A stretch of DNA of 64,000 nt from Antechinus flavipes (taxonomy: Eukaryota). The notes under the pieces are model-generated. The model was not told the DNA's origin and did not search any database. It saw nothing but the letters and a program-made list of their open reading frames with translations. Location: NCBI RefSeq assembly GCF_016432865.1, contig NC_067401.1, positions 11,904,001 through 11,968,000 of the forward strand. Reading direction: 5' to 3'. How positions within the stretch are numbered: position 1 is the first letter of the stretch; each line of letters opens with the position of its first letter. Positions 13,300 to 41,954 of this stretch are shown piece by piece. Made by a program: the position numbers and the translations under genes.

Positions 13300-16200
13300 T
13301 GGGAATGGGAGGGGGAAGATCACTATCTACCAGAAGAAAAAGAAAAAAAGTGATAGGGCAATATAAGGATTTCAAGAAGAAAATTAAATAAAAACCATGT
13401 ACAAGTAATTATGTCAACAAGGAATCCCAAAATTAGAAGGAAAAATGAATATTAAATCTTCAAAGAAAGCACAAAGCTATCTCACTCAAACATTTCAAAA
13501 TAAGTGAGTCAGTGTCTAATGAAATGTAGGATCCTATGGAATACCAAAAAAACATGGAATAATAAAGAGATTCTAGAATAGTTCAAAAGAAAAATGAAGA
13601 CTACAAGAGAAGAAATGAGGAAGGAATATATATATTTCAGAATTCACAGCTTCAATGCAGAAATTAAGAGAATAAAACTAAGCAGGTTCTTCAAAGAAGC
13701 TAAAGAAATGAACATGGATGAAAAAAAAAATACTGAATTGGAGAAAAAGCTGTCAGAAGAAAAATAAAGGACATAATGTTAAAAGAGCACATCATTTCTA
13801 TATTACTCAAAACCACTGCCTCTGTATACACAGCAGCAGCTTAAGGACCATAGGTCTCCTGGAAGAACCAACTAATTATAGGAAATCAAATTAACAAAAT
13901 AAATGAAATAGTAAACAAAACAAAACAAACAAAAAAGTTCCAAATTGTTTGGACAGTTCACAGTGCCACCAATAGTGCATTAGTGTGTTTTTCTATATCC
14001 TCTCCAGCATTTGCATTATTCTTTTTACATTTTCATTTTGGCCAATTTGAGGGATATGAGGTGTTCTCATCAAGCTAATTTAGCTTGCATTTCTTTAATT
14101 ATTACCTAGAACATTTTTCATATGAACCAGCAATTTTTAAATCAAAGCCACACTTATCAGTTAAGGAATGGTTCTTAAACTTATAAATTTCATTTAGTTT
14201 CTTCTATATTTTCAAAATGATCTTTATCAGATAAACTTGCTCTAAAGATTTTTCCCAGTTTCCTTCTTTTCCTCTAATTTTAGCTGCCTTGGTTTTGCAA
14301 AAAGTGTAACACCTTTAATTTTTAATTTTACAAAGATTAATTGATTCCAACATGGTGAAAGCATATATAGGGAATTGATGGCAAGGGAAGGAAACTTTGA
14401 TTTGCCAGGTCACAAGGATGTTGTACAGAAGAGAATGCTGACTACTAAGACCATAATAAGAGGTAGAAAAGGAGCTTCATTTCAAAAGCCCCATTTTGAA
14501 GGATTTTGGTTTCTCTGAGGGAAAAGAACCTGTAGTAGAGGCTCTGAGGAAGAATTTAGAAGCTGTCCCTCTGGGTCCTAATGGATCCTCTGGCCAGGAT
14601 CATTTTACCCTATCAAGCCTTTAGAAAGGATCAACAACAACAAAATTCTACCAAATTTTCATCACATATAGAGAAATATTTGACAAATTTGTCAGGCCAA
14701 ATCAGATTGAAGTCTACAATGTGCTAAGCAGCAGCACCAGTTACTCAGCTAGACCACCTACCATCCCAGAGAATCTGAGACCCAAAGGACCAGGTTTCAT
14801 TTTTTTTTTGTTACATGGAGTATATCCCAGTTCTTCTGTCATTACACAATTGTAGCCTGTCAAGGGACGTGGCAATTAACCTGCATACTGGAGGCCTTCA
14901 TTCTCAGGCAGGATGCAAAGAGTAGCCTGTTAATTAGGACCTGGAAACACATGGGAATGGGTCCTATGATCCTGAAAAGGACAACTGGAGACTGCAATAT
15001 TAGAGTCGAATATAATCCCAAAGAATTAAAAACAGACTTATTAAACCATCTATTAAAGTCTAGAGGACTTTCAGGCATTCCTGATGAAAAACCAGAGCTG
15101 AGTAAAATCTTTCAAATGTGAACCCAAGAGAAAAAACCTAGAGGAATAAATGCATTTGAACATTGAAAAGGAGCTATATGGTTATGAAGTGCTTACATTC
15201 TAAGAGGGAAAAGTTTCTTTTCAGAATCTCACCAGCTTCAGGGTCACAGATGAACTAAAGAAAAACAAACAGAATAGAAGATGGGTTTGTTCTGTTTGGG
15301 AGATTTTAAGAAAGGAAAAAGGGAAGGGGTAAAAACACAAATAAATTCTGGACTTGGTAAATAAAGTATGAATAGATGAATTGGAACAAATCGGATAAAA
15401 TAAAGATTACTCTTGTGCATCAGATTCCTTTTCTATATTATCCACCCCTTCTTGGTTAAAAAGAAGGCTAAGAGAAAAAGGAAAAAGCATGAGGATATAA
15501 GAGAAAATAAGTGAATAGGAACATATTAGACAGCAGAATGCAGAGTTTTCAAGGAACACATTTGAAACAAAGATTAATGCATCAAAAAAACCCTCAAAAA
15601 AGAAGCCTATCTCAGACAAGGCAATAATATAAATAGACCTGATTAAAGGAGATAAGCAAGAAAACTATAATACAAAAAGGTATGATGAATATTGAAATAC
15701 TATTAACATTATTATATATATACCAAATGGCATAACATTTAAGTACTTTAGGAAAATTTGCAATGTATTCCTTTCAGACCTTAACAAATCTAACAAATAC
15801 ATAAATTAAGGATCTGAATGGTATTTTGGAAAAGTTAGATATGATGGGTCAGTGGTTATTACTGAATGGAAAAAGAAAGGAATATACATATTTCTCATTT
15901 GTACATGCAGAACTTTTACTGACAACAATGCAATAAAAATTCAGCAAAAGACATTTGCAGAAAGGATCCAAACATACATGGAGATAATTTGATCTTTAAA
16001 ATTGATGGGTCAAAGAACAACTCTTAGAAACAGTATTTCAGCTGTGAATGACTTTGCTGTTCTCAGCAATACAATGATCCAAGATTATTCTGAAGGATTT
16101 ATGATAGTGCTATTTATGCCCAGAGAAAGGACTGATTGTATCTCAATACAGATTGAAGTTTAACTTTATTTTTCTTGAGAATGTTTTTGGGGAGAGATGT

Positions 16201-17600
16201 ATGTTTTCTTTCACAATGACTTGTGAAAATGTTTTGTACATGAGCCTTAATGTGAAGGGAGGAGTGAGGAGGAAGGGAGAGAATCTGAAACTCAAAGTTT
16301 TAAAAACAAATGGGAAAACAATTTAAATTAAAAAAAAAAATTAGAAACAAAACAGTAGATATTTGATAAGTAAAAATAGACTAAAATTTGGGATGCAGCC
16401 AAAATAGCAAAAAGTTATATGTGTATGTGCTTGAATAAAATAAAATAAAATACATATAAACACGTAGCTGTACATGTGTGTAAATATACATGCATACATA
16501 TGTATATGCACATGCATTTACACTTCAAAAGAGAAGATTGATGAATTGAATAAAATAAAATAAAAACTAGGAAAGCAACAAATTTTAAAAACTAAAATAA
16601 CACAAAAATAGAAATTATGAAAATAATTGAAAAGAAAAATGAAAAACAAAAATATATTTAATTGATGAAAGTAGGAACATTTTTAGGGGTAAAGGCTAAA
16701 AGCATTATCTATTTTGTTAAGTACATTACACTAATTTTTTTTTTTTTAGTTTTATATATTTTATTTTAAAATAACTTTATATTGACAGAATCCATGCCAG
16801 GGTAATTTTTTTGCAACATTATCTCTTGCATTCGCTTCTGTTCTGATTTTTCCCCTCCCTCCCTCCACCCCCTTCCTTAGATGGCAAGCAGTCCTATATA
16901 TGTTAGATATATTGTATACACTAATTTTTAAAAACAAATTAGATAATGTATGATAATTAGATAACTATGCCAACAAAAATTAAAACTTGACATACACAAA
17001 TATTTGCAAAACTTAAAATAGCCAGATTAACAGATTAACAAAAGAATTCATCAAATAATCTAACCTCGGAAAAAGATATTGACCAAGAGAACTTTTTAGA
17101 AAAAAGAACTCAAAGGACAGATGAATTTACAATTGAATTCAATCAAACACTCAGCAATTCATTCCCAATTATATAGATAGAACTCCTCTAAGACAAATAT
17201 AATTCTTATACTTTAAACCAGGGGAAGATAAGGGAGAAAAAGAAATCCTATATATTACATATCTTATGATTATTGATGTTAAATTAATATTGATGTAAAT
17301 ATAAAATAAAATATTAACAAAGTGCCTTTACTATATTAGATTTATACCAGCCATGTAGGGTTGTTTCATTATTAGGAAAATAATAAACATAATAGATTAT
17401 GTTAACAACAAAAATTGCATATCAATAGATGCAGAAAAGGTTTTTAACATAATGACCTTTTACATTTAAAACACTAGAAAGCATAAGAACAAAGGGATCT
17501 TAATGGCATCCAATTATCTAAAACCTAGATCTTCCACACTTGGTGATGCAAAAGCACTAAAGGCATTAAAATAAGGACTAAAGGTATGATGTTCATTGTC
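13300..17600 (+). mobile_element. old degraded LINE-1 (ORF1 end, endonuclease/RT remnants)
   Basis: A-rich. ORF1-end-like 'gaggactttcaggcattcctgatgaaaaccagagctg' (~15065), EN-like 'atctcagacaaggca...atagacctgattaaaggagataag' (~15610) and RT-like 'atcaatagatgcagaaaagg' (~17420). No long ORF; interrupted by other inserts. Confidence 0.65.
16740..16916 (-). mobile_element. young 5'-truncated LINE-1 with TSD
   Basis: Poly-T then the young L1 3' end; 13-bp direct repeat tacactaattttt at 16727-16739 and 16917-16929. Confidence 0.85.
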
Positions 17601-17869
17601 ACCATTGTCATTTGATATATAACAATGGTGGGGAATGTCCTGCCCATGAAATCATTTGATCTGGCCCTACTAAATCAACCTCTGGTGACAGCTATCTCCC
17701 ACTGCTTCAGTTCTTTTAGCTGACAGAAGAGAAAAATTCCCTATTTCTGCTCTAGAAGCACTAGCTATTGAAGTAGAAAAAGAAACAAAGTGAGGGAATA
17801 AGCAAAAGATGAGTAAGAAATGATCCTCATTTTCACAGATAATATGACTGGAAGAACTGCAAACACACT

Positions 17870-18860
17870 TTTTTTTTTAAATAGTACTTTATTTTTCCAA
17901 ATACATACAAAGATAATCTACAACATTCACCTTTATAAAACTATAAAAATTGTTCCAAATTTTTCTCTCTCCCACCTCTCACCAAACAACTCAAAATTAT
18001 GTTAAACATGTGCAATTCTACACCTATTTCCACATTCATCATGCTGCACAAGGAAAACCAGATAAGATTTGAAAAAAAGCAAGCAACAACAAAGAAAGGT
18101 GGAAACACTATGCTTTGATCCACATTCAGTGTCCACAATTCTTTCTCTGGTTTCTGCTGTGTACAGTGTTCTCTTGATTCTGCTCCTTTTACTTAGCATC
18201 AGTTCATATAAGTCCCAGGTTTTCTGAAATCAGATTGTTCTTATGGAGCAATAATATTCTGTCACATTCCTATACCATAACTTTATTTAGACACTCTCCA
18301 AATGATGGGCACCCAGTCAGTTTCCAGTTCCTTCCTACAAACATTTTTGCACACGTGGGTCCTTTTCTTTAAATCTCTTTGGGATTCAGACCCACTAGAA
18401 ACAAAGGGTATGCAGAGTTTGATAACTCTTTGGCCATAATTCCAAATTGCTCTCCAGAATGGTTGGATCAATTTACATCTCCACCAACAATGTATTAAGT
18501 GTCCCAGTTTTCCCACATCTCCTCCAATGTTTATCCTTTCCTGTCATTTTAGCCAATCTGGTAGGTATGTAGTGAGTTGTCTTAATTTATATATCTCTAA
18601 TCAATAGTGATTTAGAGCTTTGTTTTATATGACTAGGTATAACCAATTTCTTTTTTCTGAAAATTGTACATATCCTTTTGGTCATTTATCAATTGGGGAA
18701 TTGTTGTATTCTTATTTATAAAAATACAAGAGTCAATTTTCTATATATTTAGAAATGAGGCCTTTATCATAAACACTGGCTATAAAATTTTTCCTCAGCT
18801 TTCTGCTTCTCTTCTAATCTTGGCTGCATTGATTTTTGCAAAACATTCTTTGCAGAAATA
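17870..18860 (-). mobile_element. LINE-1 3' end (ORF2 C-terminus + 3'UTR)
   Basis: ORF 18283-18516 'GKLGHLIHCWWRCKLIQPFWRAIW' is the L1 ORF2 Cys-rich C-terminal motif. Confidence 0.9.
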
Positions 18861-19538
18861 AGAGCACAAATTGGTGAAAGTTAATTGCTTGTGGTTGAAT
18901 CTTGCCAATAAGACTCAATAAAATGACAAAACTTCCTTAATTAATTTAAAGATTTGGTGTCGTACTCAAACTACCAAAGGATTACTTTATATTACTATAT
19001 AAAATAATAACAATTCAATGGGAAGAATAAAGCTTAAGAATATCAAGGGAAATGGGGGAAAAAACCTAAGGTGAAAATTACAGTTTATGAGAGATTCAGA
19101 GAAACCTAGGAAGAGTTATATGAACAGATACAGAATCAAGAAATCAGAACCCAGGAGGTATTTATGCAGTGACCGCAGCATTTTAGTATTAATCAACTTG
19201 GAAAAAATTAAGAATTCTGATTAGTGCAATGATTGATCAATCAGGACTCGAAAAGACTTAAGATAAAGCACATCTCCCACTTCTCCTAGAACAGTGACCG
19301 TAGGTACAAAATTCATAATCGGACCAATGGAACACATTTGTTTTGTTACAAAAGAGATCTTTATGGAGCTGGGGGTGGGGAAGAAGTTGTCAGAAGGGGA
19401 TTGTCATAAAGATTATTCTCCCTTCTCCCCCACCCCCCTGCCAAGGACAGTAATTGAAACTTTTTTTTAGACTCAGAAAAAAATAAAAGTTCGGAGGGTG
19501 ACACAGTAGCAGAACAATATTGGTATTACCATGTTAAA

Positions 19539-19544
19539 TTTAAT
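19539..19544 (-). terminator. candidate polyadenylation signal ATTAAA of the ADAM retrogene
   Basis: Plus-strand tttaat gives ATTAAA ~150 nt after the stop, followed on the minus strand by GU/U-rich sequence (tattgttctgctactgtgtc; ttttattttttt). Confidence 0.45.
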
Positions 19545-19695
19545 TTGTGTATATATATTTGAAACAAGAAAGAAAAACAGGAAAAAAGTGGCTCTGGGAT
19601 ACTGGACATCAGGCAGGGGGGCCAGCAGCTTAAGGCAGCCCAGGGTAGCCCGATGCCAAGTGTGACTGAGATTCCTAACACTTTCCCTCCTGTAA

Positions 19696-22215
19696 CTATT
19701 TCTGGGCGGGGGCTTCCTCTGTGACCGGCTTCCTTCCCATTTTCCACTTGTAGAAGATAAATAGCAGGATGGCGATGGCCACCACCAGGGTCAGGGACAC
19801 CAGCAGGGCCACCAGCACGTTCTTGACCCTTACGTGGAGCGGGACATTGATCCTGCGGGCCAGATTGAGCCTGTCTGCGTCCAGCAGGTCCTCCCTGAGC
19901 ATGGGGAGCTTCTTCTGGCAGTCCGGGGGCGCCCAGCCGGGGTCGCAGTGGCACTCGCGCTTGTGGTCGCAGACGCCCCGCTGGTGGCACTTCTGGGAGC
20001 AGTTCTTGGCGCCGTAGACGCTGAGGTCCTGGCAGCTGCTGTGGAAGCACACCTTCTTGTTGTCGCACTTGGTGCCCGTGGCCACCGTCACGAAGGGCTG
20101 GTGGTACTCGCTCTGGGTGATGGCCAGGTCGCAGCGCTGCTCCTCCAGGAGGAAGCTGCACAGGTGCCGCAGCGTGGGCCGGATGTGGCTGGGCCGGGAG
20201 CAGAACAGGTGGCCGCACATGTCGAGGCCCTTCCGGGAGGGGTAGAAGGCCTCGGTGCAGCCCTTGGCCAGCTTGAGCAGGAAGCACTTGTCCTTGGCCA
20301 CGTCGGCGCCCACGCCCCAGAGGGCCTGGCACTGCTGCGAGTAGGTGGGGCAGGTGCCGTTGTAGCAGTAGCCCTGCCAGCAGGGGGTGCCGTTCTCCTT
20401 GTACACGTTCTCGGGACACTTGGCCTGCTTGCCGTCGCAGTACTCGGCCAGGTCGCAGGCGCTCTGCGCCTCCCGGCAGACCTCGCCGGCCTGCAGCACC
20501 TGGCACGCCTGGCAGCACTCGCCCTCGGTGCACTCGGCGCCCGCCGCCAGCCGGCAGCTCTTGGCGTTGCAGCACTGGTTGGAGCACTCCTCCGGGAAGC
20601 CGCAGTCGCACTCCTCCCCCTTTTCCAAAAACTTGTTCCCACACACGGGCTTCTCCTCCAGCGTCTCCAGCACGGGGAAGTTGTTGAGGCAGCTCGAGGA
20701 GAAGATGTTCCCTCCGAGGAACTTCTGCAGGTTGTACTTGCTGCAGCTGCTGAACTTCTTGGGGAGCAGGGTGCCCGACTTGGAGGTCATGACGCAGCCG
20801 CCGTTCTGCGCGTTGTCGCACTGGCAGTCCTTGATGTTTTCGTCGTGGTCCATGCCCAGGTTGTGGCCCATCTCGTGAGCCAGCGTGGTGGCCACCCCGA
20901 AGGCGTTGGCGCTGAAGTCCTGGCTCACGCCGCCCGAGCCCTCGGTGCACATGGAGGCCAGCCTGGCCAGCCCCATGGCGGCGCCCCCGAAGCTGACCCC
21001 CGAGATGAGCTGCGCGTTGTCGTGCTGCTTCTTCCGGACCAGGTCCTTGACCCGCCACTTGAGGAAGCTGGACAGCGTGGTCTCGATGTTGGTGTCCACC
21101 GGGGCCTTGTTGCCTTTGTCCCAGATCTCCAAGCCGGTCAGAACCACCCGGAAGTTGATCTCCTGATAAAGCCGGTCCACGTGGTTGATGATCTCCTTCA
21201 CCCGCTGGCGCATCTTCTTGAGGCTGTTGTACTTCTTGTACTCCACGTTGTCCACCACCACGAAGAGCTCCACGTAGTGCGTGTCCTTCGGGGCGGAGCC
21301 CGGGATCCAGTTCTGGGGCAAAGGCACGGCCGCCATCATGGTCTCCAGCTCCCCTTTGAGGCTGACCTTGCCCACGGCGCAAGTCTTTTTTTTCTCCTTG
21401 AGGTCTTGCTGCCTGTAGATGGCGTGCTTGCCCTGGTCGCTCCGGTGCCGCTTCTCGTTGCCCACGTACCGGCCCTGGGCGCTGCTGCTCCTCTGCTGAC
21501 TCTCCGTGGTGCCGGGGCTCTCCGGACCGGTGCCCTGTCGCTCTCGGGTGCTGCCCTGCGTGGTCTCGGTGGTGCCCGGGCTTTTGTGGGCCCTGCCGGG
21601 TTTCTCCTGCTGCCGCTCGTAGCCCTGGTCGGTGCCGTTGCTGCGTCTCTTGGGAGAGCTGTCATGGCGCCCCTGGATGACGCCGTGTTGTCCCTGGGCG
21701 CCGCCCCGTCCCTCCTGGGAACTGCCGTGGTTCTCGTGGTCCAGGGGCTCGATCAGATGGACGGTGGAGCCGGTCTTGAAGAAGCCCCGGATCCCTCGGC
21801 AGATGCTGATGCTGGCCACGGAGCTCTGGTGCCCTTCCACGTGGCCCTGGTAGAAGCAGGGCTGCCCCGCCTGCGGCTTCTCGGTCACCTCGGTGCCATT
21901 GGCCAGGGTGTGGGTCTCCGTGTAGTCGGACCCCACCAGGTGCCGGTTCCTGCGGAGGAGGAGGGTGAAGTTGTTGCCCCTCAGGCCGAGGAGGTAGCGG
22001 ATGGTCTCGGGATACAGAGTTGGGCTTGAAGAGAGTTCGTTCAGGGCTCCCGAGATGGGTAACCGGAGAGGCTGGACCACTTCGTACCGCTCCACATGGG
22101 GAAGGCGGCCCGTGGGCAGGGGAGGGGGCGCCGAGAAGCCCCGGCACTCCCTGAGAATCCTTCCCAGGCAGAGGAGGAGGAGACAGCCCCAGAAGCAGCG
22201 GCCACCGGGAAGCAT
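19696..22215 (-). CDS. ADAM8-like: intronless ADAM8-like disintegrin and metalloproteinase (probable functional retrogene), 839 aa
   Basis: Single uninterrupted ORF: signal peptide; prodomain (YEVVQPLRLP, NFTL, YTETHTLANGTEVTE, CFYQGHVEG); cysteine switch (KTCAV); reprolysin domain with HEMGHNLGMDH (aa 447-457, nt 20845-20877) and Met-turn CVM; disintegrin, Cys-rich and EGF-like domains; TM helix aa ~800-822; short tail. The motifs HEMGHNLGMDHDEN, QxINFRVVLxGLEIW and GYCYNGxCPT, and the N-glycosylation sites NFT/NGT/NCS, match ADAM8 specifically as I recall it. ATG has A at -3. Confidence 0.95.
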   Translation of the reverse strand: MLPGGRCFWGCLLLLCLGRILRECRGFSAPPPLPTGRLPHVERYEVVQPLRLPISGALNELSSSPTLYPETIRYLLGLRGNNFTLLLRRNRHLVGSDYTETHTLANGTEVTEKPQAGQPCFYQGHVEGHQSSVASISICRGIRGFFKTGSTVHLIEPLDHENHGSSQEGRGGAQGQHGVIQGRHDSSPKRRSNGTDQGYERQQEKPGRAHKSPGTTETTQGSTRERQGTGPESPGTTESQQRSSSAQGRYVGNEKRHRSDQGKHAIYRQQDLKEKKKTCAVGKVSLKGELETMMAAVPLPQNWIPGSAPKDTHYVELFVVVDNVEYKKYNSLKKMRQRVKEIINHVDRLYQEINFRVVLTGLEIWDKGNKAPVDTNIETTLSSFLKWRVKDLVRKKQHDNAQLISGVSFGGAAMGLARLASMCTEGSGGVSQDFSANAFGVATTLAHEMGHNLGMDHDENIKDCQCDNAQNGGCVMTSKSGTLLPKKFSSCSKYNLQKFLGGNIFSSSCLNNFPVLETLEEKPVCGNKFLEKGEECDCGFPEECSNQCCNAKSCRLAAGAECTEGECCQACQVLQAGEVCREAQSACDLAEYCDGKQAKCPENVYKENGTPCWQGYCYNGTCPTYSQQCQALWGVGADVAKDKCFLLKLAKGCTEAFYPSRKGLDMCGHLFCSRPSHIRPTLRHLCSFLLEEQRCDLAITQSEYHQPFVTVATGTKCDNKKVCFHSSCQDLSVYGAKNCSQKCHQRGVCDHKRECHCDPGWAPPDCQKKLPMLREDLLDADRLNLARRINVPLHVRVKNVLVALLVSLTLVVAIAILLFIFYKWKMGRKPVTEEAPAQK

Positions 22216-22364
22216 GCTGGAGAGCGGACAGCGTCTGCCCCCTCCCGGGGAGGAGGACCTTCAGTCAGCGGGGCTCCACCACCTGCTGGGCAGGGATGTG
22301 GCCGGGAGGGGCATGCTGTGCCCAGCTCCCGTGTCTCTGCCTGGGCCTCCGGACCCCTCATCCC

Positions 22365-22387
22365 CTCCCGCCCCGGCAGTGACGTCA
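22365..22387 (-). promoter_or_regulatory. GC box + perfect CRE upstream of the ADAM retrogene
   Basis: TGACGTCA at 22380-22387 and GGGGCGGGAG (minus strand) at 22365-22374, 150-172 nt upstream of the ATG. Confidence 0.6.
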
Positions 22388-22589
22388 CAAAGGGCTTTCC
22401 ACCTAACAGTCCTGTGAGGGGCCCGGCCCTTCTTCTGCTCGCCCGACTGGTGCCCAATGTCTCCCCAGTTCTGAGGAACAAAGTGGGTGCCGTCCTCCCC
22501 TGGTGCACCGAGCAGGCCTCTGTAAATCCTGGGATCAGTTAGATGCCCTTGTTTTTCCTCAGTGCTATTCCAGCCTTCCAAACGTGTGC

Positions 22590-23180
22590 AAGACCCTGTA
22601 AGACCCTGTGTTCCAAGTTATTCTCCCTCCCTCCCTGCCCTTCCCCATCCCCAAGACAGCGATCAACCTCATACAGGTTAAACACATTCAGCCCTCCCCA
22701 ACACACCTCCATATTTGTCATTCTGAGCCAGAAAAATAAGACCAAAAGGGAAAAATCCATGAGAAAGTGAAAAACACACACCAAAAGGGGAAATTCTGTG
22801 CTCTGATCCAGATTCATTCTCCATAGATCCCTATCTCGGTGTTTTTAGCATTTTCTATCCAGTTTATTGGACTTGTCTTGGATCACAGAATCGCCTAGTT
22901 GGTGAGCACACAGCCCCGTACAATGTTTTCTTGGTGCTGCTGCTCCACCAACATCAGTTCATAGAAACTTTTCCGGGTTTTTCTGACATCGAGCTGTTCA
23001 TTTTTCATGGAACAATAATATTCCGTTATATTCCTATCCCATAACTTCCTCAGCCGCTCTCCAGCTCCTGGGCAGTCACTCAGTTTCCAGTTTTTCGCCA
23101 CCACAAACATTTTGCACACGTGGATCCTTGTCTGTCTTTCATGATTTCTTCTGTAGCAGAACTGCTGGATCCAAGGGTAT
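22590..23180 (-). mobile_element. LINE-1 3' end
   Basis: 'ccaagacagcgatcaacctcatacagg...cagtttccagtttttcgccaccacaaacattttgcacacg' antisense L1; ORF 22895-23119 resembles the ORF2 C-terminus. Confidence 0.85.
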
Positions 23181-24299
23181 TGTGCAAAACCTTTTTAATT
23201 CGAAGAAATAAACATCATAATGGATCTTGTCAATAAAAAATTATTTAAAAAAAGAAGAAAAAATCATAATGGATGGCGTTGTTGCGGTCTATTGATCTAT
23301 GATGATCCCTTCAAGAATTCTGCCAGTATTTGCCCGCCAATCTCTTCGGCTGTCATGCTCTCAACAGAGAAACTCTGTTAGCTTGATCTGCTCCCAGGGG
23401 GTGACTCAGACCATTGGTTTTTTCTGAAGCCCAGGGGATTATGGGACCAGAGAAGCCTGAATTTAGAGATGGAAGGGATTTTAGAGGCTTCCAAGTCCAC
23501 CCCCCAAGTAGAGTGACTTCAGGGACTCACTCCCCTCTCAAGATCATGCAGGCCACGGCATGACACCCAAAGGGCAATGCTGCTCGGTGGAAGGAGCCCT
23601 GGTTCTGAGAGTGCCGTGCCGGAGTTCATATCCTGGCTTTAGCTATGCTACAGCAGACAGCTCACTTCATGGCTCCACTATTTTGTTTGTTCTGGAAAAC
23701 GGAGGTAGAAATCCTTGTGGATCCGTGTGTTTTATAAGTTGTTCGAAGGAAATCTCTCTGTAGACCTTGAAACCACATGGAAATTCATTTATCATTAAGC
23801 TCAAAGTCTGTTCCCACACACATCAACTCACAAAAGGTACCAGCTGAGGGAAGTTCCATGTCTGCTGCCTTCTATCCTCTATACTCCCCAGAACTGTCAG
23901 AGTGGGTCTCCTAGAGCAGACTCTTGCCCTGTTCCACAGTTCCCATGGCTCCCTAGGGAGCAACACCGATCCCTCGGCCACCATTTGAAAACCCTTTACA
24001 ACTCGAGCTATCTTTTCCAACCCTTTTCTCATACTTCCCTTCTTAAGTATCTGTAATTTATCAGGCCAGTGGTTGGTTTTTATCTTAGCATGCAGTGTCC
24101 CCAGAGTCTCTTATCTTTGTAGGCTTCCCAACTGCCTGTAGGCAGTAGGTGCTCAGTAAATATTTATTGATCTCCCTCCACATGCCCTGTGCATTTTGCA
24201 AACCCTTTTTTTGCATCCTAGCATGTTGTCCCTTCACTATTTCTGCCTCTCAGGATCCTAAGCTCTCTCCAAGAATCAGTGTATATGTCATTTGATCAG

Positions 24300-24640
24300 C
24301 TGATGTTGTAACTTGTTTCAATCCTGTACTTCTTAGGGTTTTCTTGGCAAAGATATTGAAGTGATTAGCCATTTCCTTCTCCAGCTCATTTTACAGATGA
24401 GGAAACTGAGGCACACAGGGTAAAGTGACTTACCCAGGGTCACCCAGCTAGGAAAGTCTGAGGTTGGATTTGGTTTTTTTGTTTTGTTTTATTTTTTTCC
24501 TGAGGCAATGGGGTTAAATTTATTTGCCCAGGGTCACATAGTTAGGAAGTCTTAAGTGTTGGAGACCAGATGTGAACTCGGGTCCTCCTGACTTCAGGGC
24601 TGGTGCTCTATCTACTGTACCACCTAGCTGCCCCCCCCCA
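24300..24640 (-). mobile_element. Mar1-like SINE followed by WSINE1-like SINE
   Basis: 'gggttttcttggcaaagatatt...gccatttccttctccagctcattttacagatgaggaaactgagg' then poly-T + '...gtgctctatctactgtaccacctagctgcccc'. Confidence 0.8.
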
Positions 24641-25293
24641 GGTATTAATATGTTTGTGATTATTTTATGCGTCTATATCCATCGCCCTCCCCTCCCCTTC
24701 CTTAGAATGGAAGCTTGCTGAGGACAGCTTTTATTTTTTTTTTTTATGTTTTTATGTTTTAATTTTTGTCCGTATGTCTGGTGTCTAGCACACAGAGCCT
24801 GATGAGTAGCTGGAACAAAATTAAAACTTAAATTAAATTTAATTGTTTTTCCTGGTAGTAATAAGGAATCACAGAAGAAGAGGGAGATGGTATGATTTGT
24901 GTCTTGGGAAGATCAGTTTGGCAGCTGTGGAGCAAAGAGTTAGGGAAGAAGGCAGAGGTCAAAGAATAAATAACCTGAACTAGAAGAGTGGGCTGGATCC
25001 ATCAGCATGGAGGGTGGGACGGAACCCCAAGAGGGATATTGTGGAGGTAGAATCAACCATCAGAGGTTGGCAACCAACTAGCAGGAGGGTTGAAGGTGAA
25101 AGAAGAGACAAGTGGCTGATAAACCATTTTAGAACTGGAAGGGACTGTAGTTCAGCCACCACTGGTGATAGTTTCTAAGGGAAAAGCAGCCATGATTGGA
25201 GAAATTGGTTGGGGAAAAGATATTGCTTTCTGTTTTGGGGACATCCTAGCAGAGGAGATGGAAATCTGCCAATAAGCATCTGGGCTGCCACAT

Positions 25294-28200
25294 TTTTTTT
25301 AAAATAACTTTTTATTGACAGAACCCATGCCAGGGTAATTTTTTTACAGCATTATCCCTTGCACTCACTTCTGTTCCGATTTTTCCCCTCCCTCCCTCCA
25401 CCCCCTCCTCCAAATGGCAAGCAGTCTTATACATGTTAAATAGGTTACAGTATATCCTAGATACAATATATATGTGCAGAACCGAACAGTTTTCTTGTTA
25501 CACAGGGAGAATTGGATTCAGAAGGTAGAAATAACCCGAGAAGAAAAACAGAAATGCAAGCAGTTTATTTATATTCATTTCCCAGTGTCCTTTCTTTGGG
25601 TGTAGCTGCTTCTATCCATCCTTGATCAATTGAAACTGAATTAGCTCTCTTTATCGAAGAGATCCACTTCCATCAGAATACATCCTCAAACAGTATTGTT
25701 GTTGAGGTATATAATGATCTCCTGGTTCTGCTCATTTCACTCAGCATCAGTTCATGTAAGTCTCGCCAGTCCTCTCTGTATTCATCCTGCTGGTCATTTC
25801 TTACAGAACAATAATATTCCATAACGTTCATATACCACAATTTACTCAACCATTCTCCATTGATGGGCATCCATTCATTTTCCAGCTTTTGGCACATACA
25901 GGTCCCTTTCCCTTCTTTAGTATCTCTTCGGGGTATAAGCCCAGTAGAAACACTGCTGGATCAAAGGGGATGCACAGTTTGATAACTTTTTGAGCATAGT
26001 TCTAAATCACTCTCCAGAATGGCTGGATGTGTTCACAATTCCACCAACAATGTATCAGTGTCCCTCATGCCCTCCAACATTCCGCATTATCTTTCCCTGT
26101 CATTCTAGCCAATCTGACAGGTGTGTAGTGATATCTCAGAGTTATCTTAATTTGCATTTCTCTGATTAATAATGATTTGGAGCATATTTTCATATGTCTA
26201 TAAATAGTTTCAATTTCTTCATCTGAGAATTGTCTGTTCATATCCTTTGACCATTTATCAATTGGAGAATGGCTTGCTTTCTTATAAATTAGAGTCAGTT
26301 CTCTATATATTTTGGAAATGAGGCCTTTATCAGAACCTTTGACTGTAAAAATGTTTTCCCAGTTTATTGTTTCCCTTCTAATCTTGTCTGCATTTATTTT
26401 GTTTGTACAAAAACTTTTCAATTTGATATAATCAAAATTTTCTATTTTGTGGTCATTAGTTATCTCTAGTTCTTCTTTGGTCATAAATTCCTCCCTCTTC
26501 CACAGGTCTGAGAGGTAAATTATCCTATGCTCTTCCAATTTATTTATAATCTCATTCTTTTTTTTTCCCCCTCTGGCAGAATTATGTTTTACTCTGGAGT
26601 TCCAGAGATTCTTTTTTTTTTTATTTTAATATCTTTTTATTGATAAAACGCATGCCAGGGTAATTTTTTACAGCATTATCCCTTGCACTCACTTCTGTTC
26701 CGATTTTTCCCCTCCCTCCCTCCACCCCTTCCCCCAGATGGCAAGCAGTCCTTTACATGTTGAATAGGTTACAGTATATTCTGGATACAATATATGTGTG
26801 CAGAACCAAACAGTTTTCTTGTTGCACAGGGAGAATTGAATTTAGAAGGTGTAAATAATCCGGGAAGAAAAACAAAAATGCAAGCAGTTTATATTCATTT
26901 CCCAGTGTCCTTTCTTTGGGTGTAGCTGCTTCTATCCATCCTTGATCGATTGAAACTGAATTAGCTCTCTTTATCGAAGAGATCCACTTCCATCAGAATA
27001 CATCCTCAAACAGTATCGTTGTTGAGGTATATAATGATCTCCTGGTTCTGCTCATTTCACTCAGCATCAGTTCATGTAAGTCTCGCCAGTCCTCTCTGTA
27101 TTCATCCTGCTGGTCATTCCTTACAGAACAATAATATTCCATAACATTCATATACCACAATTTACTCAACCATTCTCCAATTGATGGACATCCATTCATT
27201 TTCCAGCTTCTAGCCACTACAAACAGGGCTGCCACAAACATTTTGGCACATACAGGTCCCTTTCCCTTCTTTAGTATCTCTTTGGGGTATAAGCCCAGTA
27301 GAAACACTGCTGGATCAAAGGGTATGCACAGTTTGATAACTTTTTGAGCATAGTTCCAAATTGCTCTCCAAAATGGCTGGATGTGTTCACAATTCCACCA
27401 ACAATGTATCAGTGTCCCTGTTTTCCCACATCCCCTCCAACATTCCCCATTATCTTTCCCTGTCATTCTAGCCAATCTGACAGGTGTGTAGTGGTATCTC
27501 AGAGTTGTCTTAATTTGCATTTCTCTGATTAATAATGATTTGGAGCATATTTTCATATGTCTATAAATAGTTTCAATTTCTTCATCTGAGAATTGTCTGT
27601 TCATATCCTTTGACCATTTATCAATTGGAGAATGGTTTGATTTCTTATAGATTAGAGTCAATTCTCTATATATTTTGGAAATGAGGCCTTTATCAGAACC
27701 TTTGATTGTAAAAATGTTTTCCCAGTTTATTGTTTCCCTTCTAATCTTGTTTGCATTTGTTTGTTTGTACAAAAACTTTTCAATTTGATATAATCAAAAT
27801 TTTCTATGTTGTGGTCAGTAGTGATCTCTAGTTCTTCTTTGGTCATAAATTCCTCCCTGTTCCACAGGTCTGCGAGGTAAACTATCCTATGCTCTTCCAA
27901 TTTATTTATAAATTCATTCTTTATGCCTAGGTCATGAACCCATTTTGACCTTATTTTGGTGTACGGTGTTAAGTGTGGGTCAATGCCTAGTTTCTGCCAT
28001 GCTGATTTCCAATTTTCCTAGCAATTTTTGTCAAATAATGTGTTCTTATCCCAAAAACTGGAGTCTTTGGGTTTGTCAAACACTAGATTATTAAAATTAT
28101 TGGCTGTTTTGTCCTTTGAAATGTTGGAGTTCAAATGTTGGAATTCTTGTTCTTCTCAAAACACAGCTGGTTTAGCTTAGAGCCCTCCGAATATCTCCAA

Positions 28201-41638: not shown

Positions 41639-41954
41639 NNNNNNNNNNNNNNNNNNNNNNNNNNNNNNNNNNNNNNNNNNNNNNNNNNNNNNNNNNNNNN
41701 NNNNNNNNNNNNNNNNNNNNNNNNNNNNNNNNNNNNNNNNNNNNNNNNNNNNNNNNNNNNNNNNNNNNNNNNNNNNNNNNNNNNNNNNNNNNNNNNNNNN
41801 NNNNNNNNNNNNNNNNNNNNNNNNNNNNNNNNNNNNNNNNNNNNNNNNNNNNNNNNNNNNNNNNNNNNNNNNNNNNNNNNNNNNNNNNNNNNNNNNNNNN
41901 NNNNNNNNNNNNNNNNNNNNNNNNNNNNNNNNNNNNNNNNNNNNNNNNNNNNNN
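41639..41954. other. assembly gap (316 N)
   Basis: Run of N. Confidence 1.

What the first reader, a model, noticed from the sequence alone, without database searches (positions are those of the whole stretch)
21433..21738. ~100-aa QG/Ser/Thr-rich repeat expansion inserted in the prodomain just before the cysteine switch
Seen: between EPLD (aa 159) and GKHAIY (aa 262) lie 102 residues with seven xQG motifs and a duplicated SPGTTE at 21-aa spacing. Units such as AQGQHGVI, IQGRH, AQGRY and DQGYERQQ echo the native DQGKHAIYRQQ that follows. From memory, human ADAM8 has only a few residues here (EPLDEGGEGGRHAVY). Inference: serial in-frame duplication of the QGxH segment built a disordered loop. 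It could be O-glycosylated, alter autocatalytic activation (ADAM8 has no furin site, and none is evident here), or act as a Gln-rich transglutaminase substrate, as in seminal coagulum proteins (speculative).
Basis: partly seen in the sequence, partly recalled or inferred. Interest (0 to 1): 0.7.

Follow-up and report, generated by a model that had tools for sequence, protein, structure and literature searches.

The report
Decayed heptad repeat in ADAM8 retrogene prodomain
A marsupial-only, intron-free copy of the protease gene ADAM8 carries a roughly 100-residue floppy loop built from a decayed 7-residue repeat just ahead of the enzyme's safety catch; the loop varies from 99 to 307 residues among marsupials, and its function is untested.

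Summary
Window 21433-21738 (minus strand) encodes residues 160-261 of an intact 839-aa intronless ADAM8-like ORF (19696-22215). The 102 residues lie between EPLD and GKHAIY. They hold 7 QG motifs against 2.3 expected (P about 0.001) and SPGTTE twice, 21 residues apart.

- The insert is a degenerate 7-residue (21-nt) coding tandem repeat with consensus H-G-x-x-Q-(G/E)-(K/R). Autocorrelation gives z = 5.3 at lag 7.
- The same site holds clean arrays in orthologues: brushtail possum 307 aa, Gracilinanus 213, Monodelphis 171, Dromiciops 99, Tasmanian devil 104.
- A sister paralogue has two units. Canonical ADAM8 of marsupials, placentals and human has none.
- The gene is a marsupial-stem derivative of ADAM8 under purifying selection. 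The array itself drifts: omega about 1.1 against the devil, with in-frame indels that include one 7-aa unit.
- AlphaFold2 predicts disorder between two confident strands.

Function is untested. My best reading is a slippage-prone, largely neutral disordered loop, which may affect autocatalytic activation.

Another note of this scan flagged the retrogene itself on this same window. I found no paper describing the gene or the repeat.

The parts
19696..22215 (-). Intact intronless ADAM8-like ORF of 839 aa plus stop (RG1 retrogene)
   Evidence: ORF list. Pfam: propeptide, Reprolysin, Disintegrin, ADAM_CR, EGF. 89-90% identical to the Sarcophilus orthologue P0001. It is the only copy in the window.
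21433..21738 (-). The finding: 102-aa insert (aa 160-261), a degenerate heptad (21-nt) coding repeat of about 14-15 units
   Evidence: Coordinates and motif counts. Lag-7 autocorrelation z = 5.3. Heptad layout against the possum unit profile. pLDDT 26-33 with no secondary structure.
21739..21750 (-). EPLD (aa 156-159), the end of the conserved prodomain strand that borders the array on its N-terminal side
   Evidence: E156, P157 and L158 are invariant in 17 sequences. Strand E151-157, 10-residue block means 82-85.
21415..21432 (-). GKHAIY (aa 262-267), the native ADAM8 segment that borders the array and looks like the template of the repeat unit
   Evidence: Aligns to human GRHAVY. Strand E264-268, 10-residue block mean 85.
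21565..21582 (-). SPGTTE, copy 1 (aa 212-217)
21502..21519 (-). SPGTTE, copy 2 (aa 233-238), 21 aa (three heptads) after copy 1
   Evidence: In Sarcophilus the two copies are 28 aa apart because of one extra 7-aa unit.
21631..21639 (-). N-G-T N-glycosylation sequon inside the array (aa 193-195)
   Evidence: Regex. Also NGT in Sarcophilus, and NST in a similar part of the Trichosurus array.
21370..21384 (-). Cysteine-switch segment T-C-A-V-G (Cys279). It reads C-A-V here but C-G-V in every other sequence aligned
   Evidence: C279 is invariant in 41 sequences.
20842..20877 (-). Zinc-binding active-site motif HEMGHNLGMDHD (aa 447-458)
   Evidence: Invariant H447, E448, H451, H457 and D458.
19738..19824 (-). 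Predicted transmembrane helix (about aa 798-826), followed by a cytoplasmic tail of only about 13 aa
   Evidence: AlphaFold2 helix 798-826. The alignment shows loss of the long Pro-rich ADAM8 tail.

Best explanation
The 306 bases encode a decayed coding minisatellite. On the marsupial stem, an ADAM8 mRNA was retroposed to give an intronless gene. In that gene, the few codons for the turn between two prodomain strands (...HLIEPLD | E/Q-G-R/K-H | AVY...) began to duplicate in frame as a 21-nt unit encoding H-G-x-x-Q-(G/E)-(K/R). Replication slippage or unequal exchange then expanded, contracted and homogenised the array independently in each lineage. In the dasyurid lineage of this window the array stopped being homogenised and drifted into a Gly/Gln/Ser/Thr/Arg-rich sequence of about 14-15 units. 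Its outer units are still recognisable, and one internal 21-aa (three-unit) duplication remains.

The product is an intrinsically disordered, hydrophilic loop. It is tolerated because both flanking strands are kept, and the reading frame is held by selection on the downstream catalytic domain.

Its position is notable. It ends 9 residues before the residue that aligns with human ADAM8 Glu158 and 18 residues before the switch cysteine. So it lengthens the tether between the prodomain body and the cysteine-switch segment.

Shown here: the repeat nature, homology of the site, age, disorder prediction and near-neutral drift. Inferred: the slippage mechanism. The loop's present role is most likely that of a sequence-independent spacer. 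Any effect on autocatalytic prodomain removal or glycosylation is secondary and untested.
For: - Exact coordinates and QG excess.
- 7-residue periodicity in the window (z = 5.3, 2.5 and 3.4 at lags 7, 14 and 21), and likewise in Gracilinanus (5.8), Monodelphis (6.6) and Trichosurus (22-29).
- The same insertion point in all RG1 orthologues. Canonical ADAM8 has 2-5 residues there, and the RG2 paralogue has 15 residues, equal to two units.
- At DNA level, Trichosurus has a 21-nt-period array of about 810 bp with a 147-nt higher-order unit repeated 5.5 times. Dromiciops has 21/42-nt periods. Gracilinanus has a run of 7 HGGTPER units, 5 of them consecutive and identical, with one variant and a 4-residue interruption.
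- The outer units are conserved. HRSDQGK is identical in the window and Trichosurus, and the first two or three units are alignable in all.
- A 7-aa indel separates the window from Sarcophilus.
- All five loci are single uninterrupted ORFs.
- Tree: RG1+RG2 has 100/100 support and is sister to marsupial ADAM8 within therian ADAM8.
- Gene-wide dN/dS is 0.16-0.40, and 0.06 for the catalytic domain against Sarcophilus. The insert has omega 1.12, 67% aa identity and 12 gapped columns.
- AlphaFold2 gives insert block-mean pLDDT of 26-33 with no secondary structure, flanked by strands 151-157 and 264-268 in blocks of mean 82-85.
- RG1 and ADAM8 lie on different chromosome-scale contigs in Trichosurus, Dromiciops and Gracilinanus (contig lengths).
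Against: - Tandem Repeats Finder finds no repeat in the window's own DNA. Only one weak 34-nt pair is seen. The repeat reading for this species therefore leans on protein-level periodicity and on orthologues.
- Only 6 of the roughly 15 window units score positively against the possum unit profile.
- All six RG1 lineages keep at least 99 residues, and three independent lineages sit at 99-104. That could mean selection for a minimum loop length rather than pure neutrality.
- Expression of the gene, and retention of the array in mRNA, are not shown for this species. Annotated models in Dromiciops, wombat and Monodelphis (Ensembl) omit the array.
Confidence: 0.8

Rival explanations
1. The array is a functional regulator of zymogen activation. 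By lengthening the disordered tether just before the ADAM8 pre-processing site and cysteine switch, it sets how easily the prodomain is cut and released. Unit number is then the evolvable parameter.
For: ADAM8 removes its own prodomain autocatalytically rather than by furin (PMC9995898; PMC7815795). No furin site exists in this protein. The array ends 9 residues before the residue aligned with human Glu158 and 18 before the switch Cys. From my memory of Hall et al. 2009, whose title is confirmed in the reference list but which is not held, Glu158 is the pre-processing site. All six RG1 lineages retain at least 99 residues over at least the age of crown marsupials. Dibasic KRR (aa 189) and KR (aa 255) lie within the loop.
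Against: The central sequence drifts at omega about 1.1. Length varies threefold among species with no visible compensation. The dibasic motifs and His periodicity are not conserved between lineages. No experiment bears on it.
Confidence: 0.15
2. The stretch is not part of the mature mRNA or protein. It would be removed as an intron within the exon ('intronization'), as several database gene models suggest.
For: The NCBI Dromiciops model P0003 omits 94 aa of the array. The Gracilinanus model P0004 omits 46 aa. Ensembl models for wombat (P0006) and Monodelphis (P0009) skip the region.
Against: The omitted stretches in Dromiciops and Gracilinanus have no GT...AG within 6 nt of either boundary. 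They are flanked by repeat-unit identities, as expected from collapsed or misaligned repeats. The NCBI Trichosurus and Monodelphis models and the Sarcophilus UniProt model keep the whole array. The frame has stayed open through the array in five species. Two small runs of organism C hold 0.91-0.95 of the sampled words of 19600-22400, more than the 0.89 possible if the 306 nt were missing, but whether these runs are RNA is unknown.
Confidence: 0.05
3. The loop is a substrate module. One version is a Gln/Lys-rich transglutaminase cross-linking site, as in seminal coagulum or cornified-envelope proteins. The other is a mucin-like O-glycosylated stalk.
For: The ancestral unit carries Q and K/R in every heptad. 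The window's insert has 13 Q, 22 S+T and an N-G-T sequon. Intronless ADAM copies in placentals are typically testis-expressed (general knowledge, not tested here).
Against: The window has only 4 Lys in 102 residues. Ser+Thr is 22% and Pro 5%, which is weak for a mucin domain. The loop sits in a prodomain that is normally discarded. There are no expression or tissue data. Composition differs strongly between lineages.
Confidence: 0.05

Closest known systems
ADAM8 (CD156a), the parent gene
   Same: Best non-marsupial matches are ADAM8 throughout. It has the same domain order, the HEMGHNLGMDHD zinc site, a cysteine switch, no furin site, and the conserved EPLD...G(R/K)HA(V/I)Y frame around the insertion point.
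   Different: The coding sequence is intronless and forms a separate clade. It lies on a different chromosome in three species. The cytoplasmic tail is cut to about 13 residues, so the Pro-rich SH3-binding tail is lost. The prodomain carries the 99-307-aa heptad array that no canonical ADAM8 has.
Intronless ADAM genes of placental mammals (ADAM20, 21, 29, 30 and others)
   Same: These are also ADAM genes with single-exon coding regions, generally taken to be retroposed (recalled general knowledge).
   Different: They derive from other ADAM lineages, not ADAM8. I know of no repeat array in their prodomains. Testis expression is not shown for the marsupial gene.
Coding minisatellites (VNTRs) in proteins, e.g. 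involucrin 10-aa Gln-rich repeats and the prion octarepeat
   Same: Short in-frame units expand and contract by lineage. The centre is homogenised, the edges are degenerate, and the product is disordered and hydrophilic.
   Different: The location is inside a metalloprotease prodomain, next to the cysteine switch. There is no sequence homology to those repeats. Within-species length polymorphism has not been examined.
O-glycosylated linker of MMP-9 and upstream prodomain cleavage sites of ADAM9/10/17
   Same: These are flexible or cleavable segments of metzincins that influence activation or domain spacing (general knowledge).
   Different: They are of a different protease family or in a different position, and they are not repeat arrays. 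The resemblance is functional analogy only.

Membership tests
ADAM (M12B reprolysin) proteases | Propeptide, reprolysin catalytic domain, disintegrin, cysteine-rich domain and EGF, in that order | tested here: met
   Pfam hits are all above their curated cut-offs except EGF_2, which scores 19.9 against 22.1. PDB matches have E-values as low as 1e-88.
ADAM (M12B reprolysin) proteases | Catalytic HExxHxxGxxHD zinc motif intact | tested here: met
   HEMGHNLGMDHD at aa 447-458. The residues are invariant in the alignments.
ADAM8 orthologue (the ADAM8 gene proper) | Groups with ADAM8 of the same taxon in a tree | tested here: not met
   The window groups with the RG1 'ADAM8-like' proteins. RG1+RG2 (100/100) is sister to all marsupial ADAM8.
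ADAM8 orthologue (the ADAM8 gene proper) | Long Pro-rich cytoplasmic tail with SH3-binding motifs | tested here: not met
   The tail ends about 13 residues after the membrane helix.
ADAM8 orthologue (the ADAM8 gene proper) | No proprotein-convertase site, with autocatalytic prodomain removal | tested here: inconclusive
   No R-X-K/R-R anywhere. Autocatalysis itself is known only for ADAM8 and cannot be tested with these tools.
Processed retrogene | Coding region uninterrupted where the parent has many introns | tested here: met
   Single ORFs in the window and in four other marsupials. The multi-exon structure of ADAM8 is established knowledge and was not re-derived here.
Processed retrogene | Located away from the parent gene | tested here: met
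   RG1 and ADAM8 are on contigs of different length in Trichosurus, Dromiciops and Gracilinanus. No second ADAM copy is in the window.
Processed retrogene | Poly(A) remnant and target-site duplications | tested here: inconclusive
   Only an ATTAAA near 19545 and an A8 run near 19465 lie downstream of the stop. That is expected for an insertion this old. The GC island (60-68%) in a 25-40% GC background fits a foreign origin.
Coding tandem repeat (minisatellite) | Head-to-tail units of constant period | tested here: met
   TRF is positive in Trichosurus and Dromiciops. In the window TRF is negative, but the protein has lag-7/14/21 periodicity.
Coding tandem repeat (minisatellite) | Copy-number differences between lineages in whole units | tested here: met
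   Arrays of 15, 99, 102, 104, 171, 213 and 307 aa. A 7-aa indel separates the window from Sarcophilus.
Coding tandem repeat (minisatellite) | Length polymorphism within a species | not tested
Transglutaminase substrate or mucin-like domain | Demonstrated cross-linking or O-glycosylation | not testable with these tools
   Only composition is available: 13 Q, 4 K, 22 S+T and 5 P in 102 residues.

The most novel reading that the evidence does not exclude
The heptad array is a copy-number-tunable latency element. It would be a slippage-prone disordered tether placed immediately before the autocatalytic pre-processing site and cysteine switch, so that gain or loss of units shifts how readily this marsupial-specific ADAM8 derivative activates itself. 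That would give a protease zymogen whose activation threshold evolves, and perhaps varies among individuals, by VNTR length.
Probability: 0.12. Interest if true: 0.7.

Novelty: new variant of a known kind. Interest (0 to 1): 0.45.

Why it matters
ADAM8 is unusual among ADAMs in activating itself, and the segment around the cysteine switch is where that happens. Marsupials have run a natural experiment on this segment. The same loop is 2-5 residues in ADAM8, 15 in one derived paralogue, and 99-307 in the other, all with intact catalytic machinery under purifying selection. That gives a ready-made series for testing how tether length affects prodomain release.

It is also a clean example of the birth, homogenisation and decay of a coding minisatellite inside a conserved enzyme. 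It carries a practical warning as well: current marsupial gene models handle the array inconsistently. If the loop proves neutral, the finding is a tidy but ordinary case of repeat drift in a tolerant loop.

Tried and rejected
For the record, a local tblastn in the closed script used the whole window file as its subject, and composition_profile covered 15000-27000.
- The exact window protein is not on record in the contig index, so no transcript contig could be fetched.
- TRF on the window's insert found nothing.
- The Hall et al. 2009 paper on ADAM8 pre-processing is not held, and full-text searches for Glu158 with ADAM8 found nothing. That detail rests on memory. I checked only that human P0103 has E at 158 and C at 167.
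- Literature searches for a marsupial ADAM8 retrogene or 'ADAM8-like' returned no relevant paper.
- I rejected the idea that the model gaps in Dromiciops and Gracilinanus are introns, because they lack GT-AG.
- I rejected a His-dependent metal-binding role for this species. His periodicity is largely lost in the window, with 6 His in 102 residues against one per unit in the possum.
- The human ADAM8 protein returned by the search tool (P0103) was used only in protein alignments. No human contig was handled.
Full report
**1. What is at the coordinates**

The minus strand of the window holds one uninterrupted ORF, 19696-22215, of 839 codons plus stop. Pfam finds a reprolysin propeptide (aa 63-127), a reprolysin catalytic domain (313-514), a disintegrin (531-603), an ADAM cysteine-rich domain and a weak EGF. 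The best solved relatives are snake-venom P-III metalloproteinases. Among mammalian enzymes the best is the ADAM8 catalytic domain.

Translation shows EPLD at aa 156-159 and GKHAIY from aa 262. The 102 residues between them map exactly to 21433-21738.
- There are six QG inside the insert plus one straddling the 3' border. That is 7 against 2.26 in shuffles (P = 0.00125), and only two QG occur in the other 735 residues.
- SPGTTE occurs at aa 212 and 233. This corresponds to a 34-nt DNA pair at 63-nt spacing with 76% identity.

The window protein has no R-X-K/R-R site anywhere.

**2. The gene**

A word-based protein search shows that the closest relatives are marsupial proteins annotated 'ADAM8-like':
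- Sarcophilus, 843 aa, 89% identity
- Trichosurus, 1109 aa
- Dromiciops, 917 aa
- Gracilinanus, 939 aa
- Monodelphis, 934 aa (identified)

A second, shorter group of about 685 aa occurs in Trichosurus, Sarcophilus and Vombatus. Behind these come the canonical ADAM8 of marsupials (52-57% identity) and of placentals (about 47%).

I fetched the loci of Dromiciops, Trichosurus, Gracilinanus and Sarcophilus. In each, the coding region is a single open frame.

A maximum-likelihood tree, built with the array cut out, puts the long group (RG1, including the window) and the short group (RG2) together with 100/100 support. That pair is sister to all marsupial ADAM8, inside therian ADAM8. In three species, RG1 and ADAM8 lie on chromosome-scale contigs of different length.

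So this is a derivative of ADAM8 with an intronless coding region. It formed on the marsupial stem and then duplicated.

The gene is kept by selection:
- Pairwise dN/dS outside the insert is 0.16-0.40 among four species.
- Against Sarcophilus it is 0.36 overall and 0.06 for the catalytic domain.
- The zinc motif HEMGHNLGMDHD and the switch cysteine (C279) are intact.

The gene stands out as a 60-68% GC island in 25-40% GC surroundings. The window holds no other ADAM copy. Another follow-up note of this scan names the genome as the yellow-footed antechinus. I did not check that, but 89-90% identity to the devil fits a dasyurid.

**3. What the insert is**

The alignment shows that every RG1 protein has extra sequence at exactly this point. 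RG2 has 15 extra residues. Canonical ADAM8 has only 2-5 residues between EPL(D/E) and the G(R/K)HAVY-type motif (one more residue, 3-6, counting to the His itself).

In the brushtail possum the extra sequence is 307 residues of an almost perfect 7-residue repeat, H-G-(I/S)-(T/P)-Q-(G/E)-(K/R). At DNA level it is a 21-nt-period array of about 810 bp with a 147-nt higher-order unit repeated 5.5 times. Dromiciops has 99 residues with 21/42-nt periodicity detectable by TRF. Gracilinanus has 213 residues, including a run of seven HGGTPER units. Monodelphis has 171 and Sarcophilus 104.

In the window itself TRF finds nothing. A BLOSUM autocorrelation against 500 shuffles gives z = 5.3 at lag 7, 2.5 at lag 14 and 3.4 at lag 21, with no other positive lag above 2. 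Both opossums show the same pattern.

Laid out against the possum unit profile, the window reads as about 14-15 units. The first three or four (HGSSQEG, RGGAQGQ, HGVIQGR, HDSSPKR) and the last (HRSDQGK, identical to the possum's last unit) are clear. The middle has drifted to a Ser/Thr/Gly/Pro-rich sequence. Conserved edges with a variable centre are what a slippage-prone array is expected to show.

The last unit runs straight into the native ...QGKH-AIY. RG2, with QGR-YGSIQER-SGNAQGK-H, looks like the two-unit early stage.

**4. How it evolves**

Against Sarcophilus the insert is 67% identical in protein and 82% in DNA, compared with 93% and 96% elsewhere. It has dN 0.21, dS 0.19 and omega 1.12. 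It has 12 gapped columns in four indels, all in frame, one of which is exactly 7 residues. The two SPGTTE-like copies exist in both species, 21 and 28 residues apart, so that duplication predates their split.

In this lineage the centre of the array therefore drifts about as fast as silent sites. The frame is kept because everything downstream is needed.

One point speaks for some constraint. All six RG1 lineages keep at least 99 residues, and three of them sit at 99-104.

**5. Structure**

AlphaFold2 with a 41-sequence alignment gives mean pLDDT 62. Confidence is good for the prodomain sheet, the catalytic domain and the cysteine-rich domain. Residues 161-257 have 10-residue block means of 26-33 and no secondary structure. 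Directly adjoining are predicted strands 151-157 (TVHLIEP) and 264-268 (HAIYR), in blocks of mean 82-85.

I read this as an expanded loop between two strands of the prodomain. I did not check that the two strands pair with each other.

The insert has only 8 hydrophobic residues in 102. It has 16 K+R, 12 D+E, 6 His and 22 Ser+Thr, plus an N-G-T sequon at aa 193.

**6. Bearing on activation**

ADAM8 removes its own prodomain instead of relying on furin, and an active-site E330Q change blocks this (PMC9995898; PMC7815795).

From memory, Hall et al. 2009 (Biosci Rep 29:217) reported that human ADAM8 is first cut at Glu158 within the prodomain, ahead of the switch Cys167. The title appears in the reference list seen, but the paper is not held. 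I could check only that the human sequence has E158 and C167.

In the alignment the array ends 9 residues before the position of Glu158 (window Q270) and 18 before C279. The loop is thus placed where it could change access to that site. Nothing here shows that it does.

**7. Is it in the mRNA?**

This could not be settled.

Indirect points:
- The gaps that the NCBI models leave in Dromiciops (94 aa) and Gracilinanus (46 aa) have no GT...AG within 6 nt. They are bounded by repeat-unit identities, so they look like repeat collapse rather than introns.
- The Trichosurus, Monodelphis and Sarcophilus models keep the array.
- Two small runs of one organism hold 0.91-0.95 of the sampled words of 19600-22400, more than the 0.89 possible without the 306 nt. 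Their kind (RNA or DNA) is not on record.

**8. Comparison and novelty**

The protein works like, and descends from, ADAM8, but it is not the ADAM8 orthologue. It is in a separate clade, its coding sequence is intronless, and its tail is truncated. The databases already list the genes as 'ADAM8-like'.

I found no paper on a marsupial ADAM8 retrogene or on a repeat in an ADAM prodomain in the searchable library. That library omits most subscription journals.

I rate it a new variant of a known kind: a coding minisatellite, which is common, in an unusual and mechanistically interesting place.

**9. Verdict**

- The origin by serial duplication is supported.
- The functional ideas are open, with near-neutral drift as the default.
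- Interest is moderate (0.45).

Noticed in passing
window 21376-21378 (codon of aa 280, within 21370-21384): The cysteine switch reads T-C-A-V-G in this species. All 16 other sequences aligned, including the devil orthologue, have C-G-V. This is a Gly-to-Ala change next to the zinc-ligating Cys.
   Followed up: partly
window 19699-19905 (aa 771-839): The stalk, membrane helix and short tail have dN 0.113, dS 0.038 and omega 3.0 against Sarcophilus over 69 codons. This is the fastest-evolving part of the protein outside the array. The long Pro-rich ADAM8 tail is absent in all RG1 proteins.
   Followed up: partly
window 22380-22387: A perfect palindromic cAMP-response element, TGACGTCA, lies about 165 bp upstream of the start codon, inside the GC island. 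Dromiciops appears to have TGAGGTCA at the matching place, inferred from ORF translations and not read directly. This could bear on where the retrogene is expressed.
   Followed up: no
window 19500-22500: There is a sharp GC island (55-68% GC) coextensive with the ORF plus about 300 bp upstream. It is set in 25-40% GC DNA, and the high GC has been kept despite the gene's age.
   Followed up: partly
L001:2716-5538, L003:1992-4958: Public gene models omit part or all of the array without canonical splice sites (Dromiciops 282 nt, Gracilinanus 138 nt). Ensembl models for wombat and Monodelphis skip it as well. The array is probably mis-modelled in marsupial annotations. The Dromiciops model also joins a far-downstream exon, giving an 83-kb gene.
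   Followed up: partly
P0007, P0008, P0124, P0125 (RG2 paralogues): A second ADAM8-derived paralogue group carries only two heptads. Most of its models end before the membrane helix (about 685 aa), and one is flagged LOW QUALITY. It may be a secreted form or a decaying copy. No opossum member was seen.
   Followed up: no
L002:3503-4314: The possum array has a 147-nt (seven-unit) higher-order repeat, 5.5 copies at 82% match. This points to recent block-wise expansion.
   Followed up: partly
L004:3001-22919: The GenBank Sarcophilus model P0121 replaces the signal peptide with an exon about 17 kb upstream. The plain ORF at 20388-22919 equals UniProt P0001 and keeps the signal peptide.
   Followed up: no
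window 41639-41954: A run of N (assembly gap or masked stretch), left untouched.
   Followed up: no
L001:89065-89136: In Dromiciops the next called gene downstream has enoyl-CoA hydratase / 3-hydroxyacyl-CoA dehydrogenase domains (EHHADH-like). It could serve as a synteny anchor for RG1. I did not look for it in the window.
   Followed up: no
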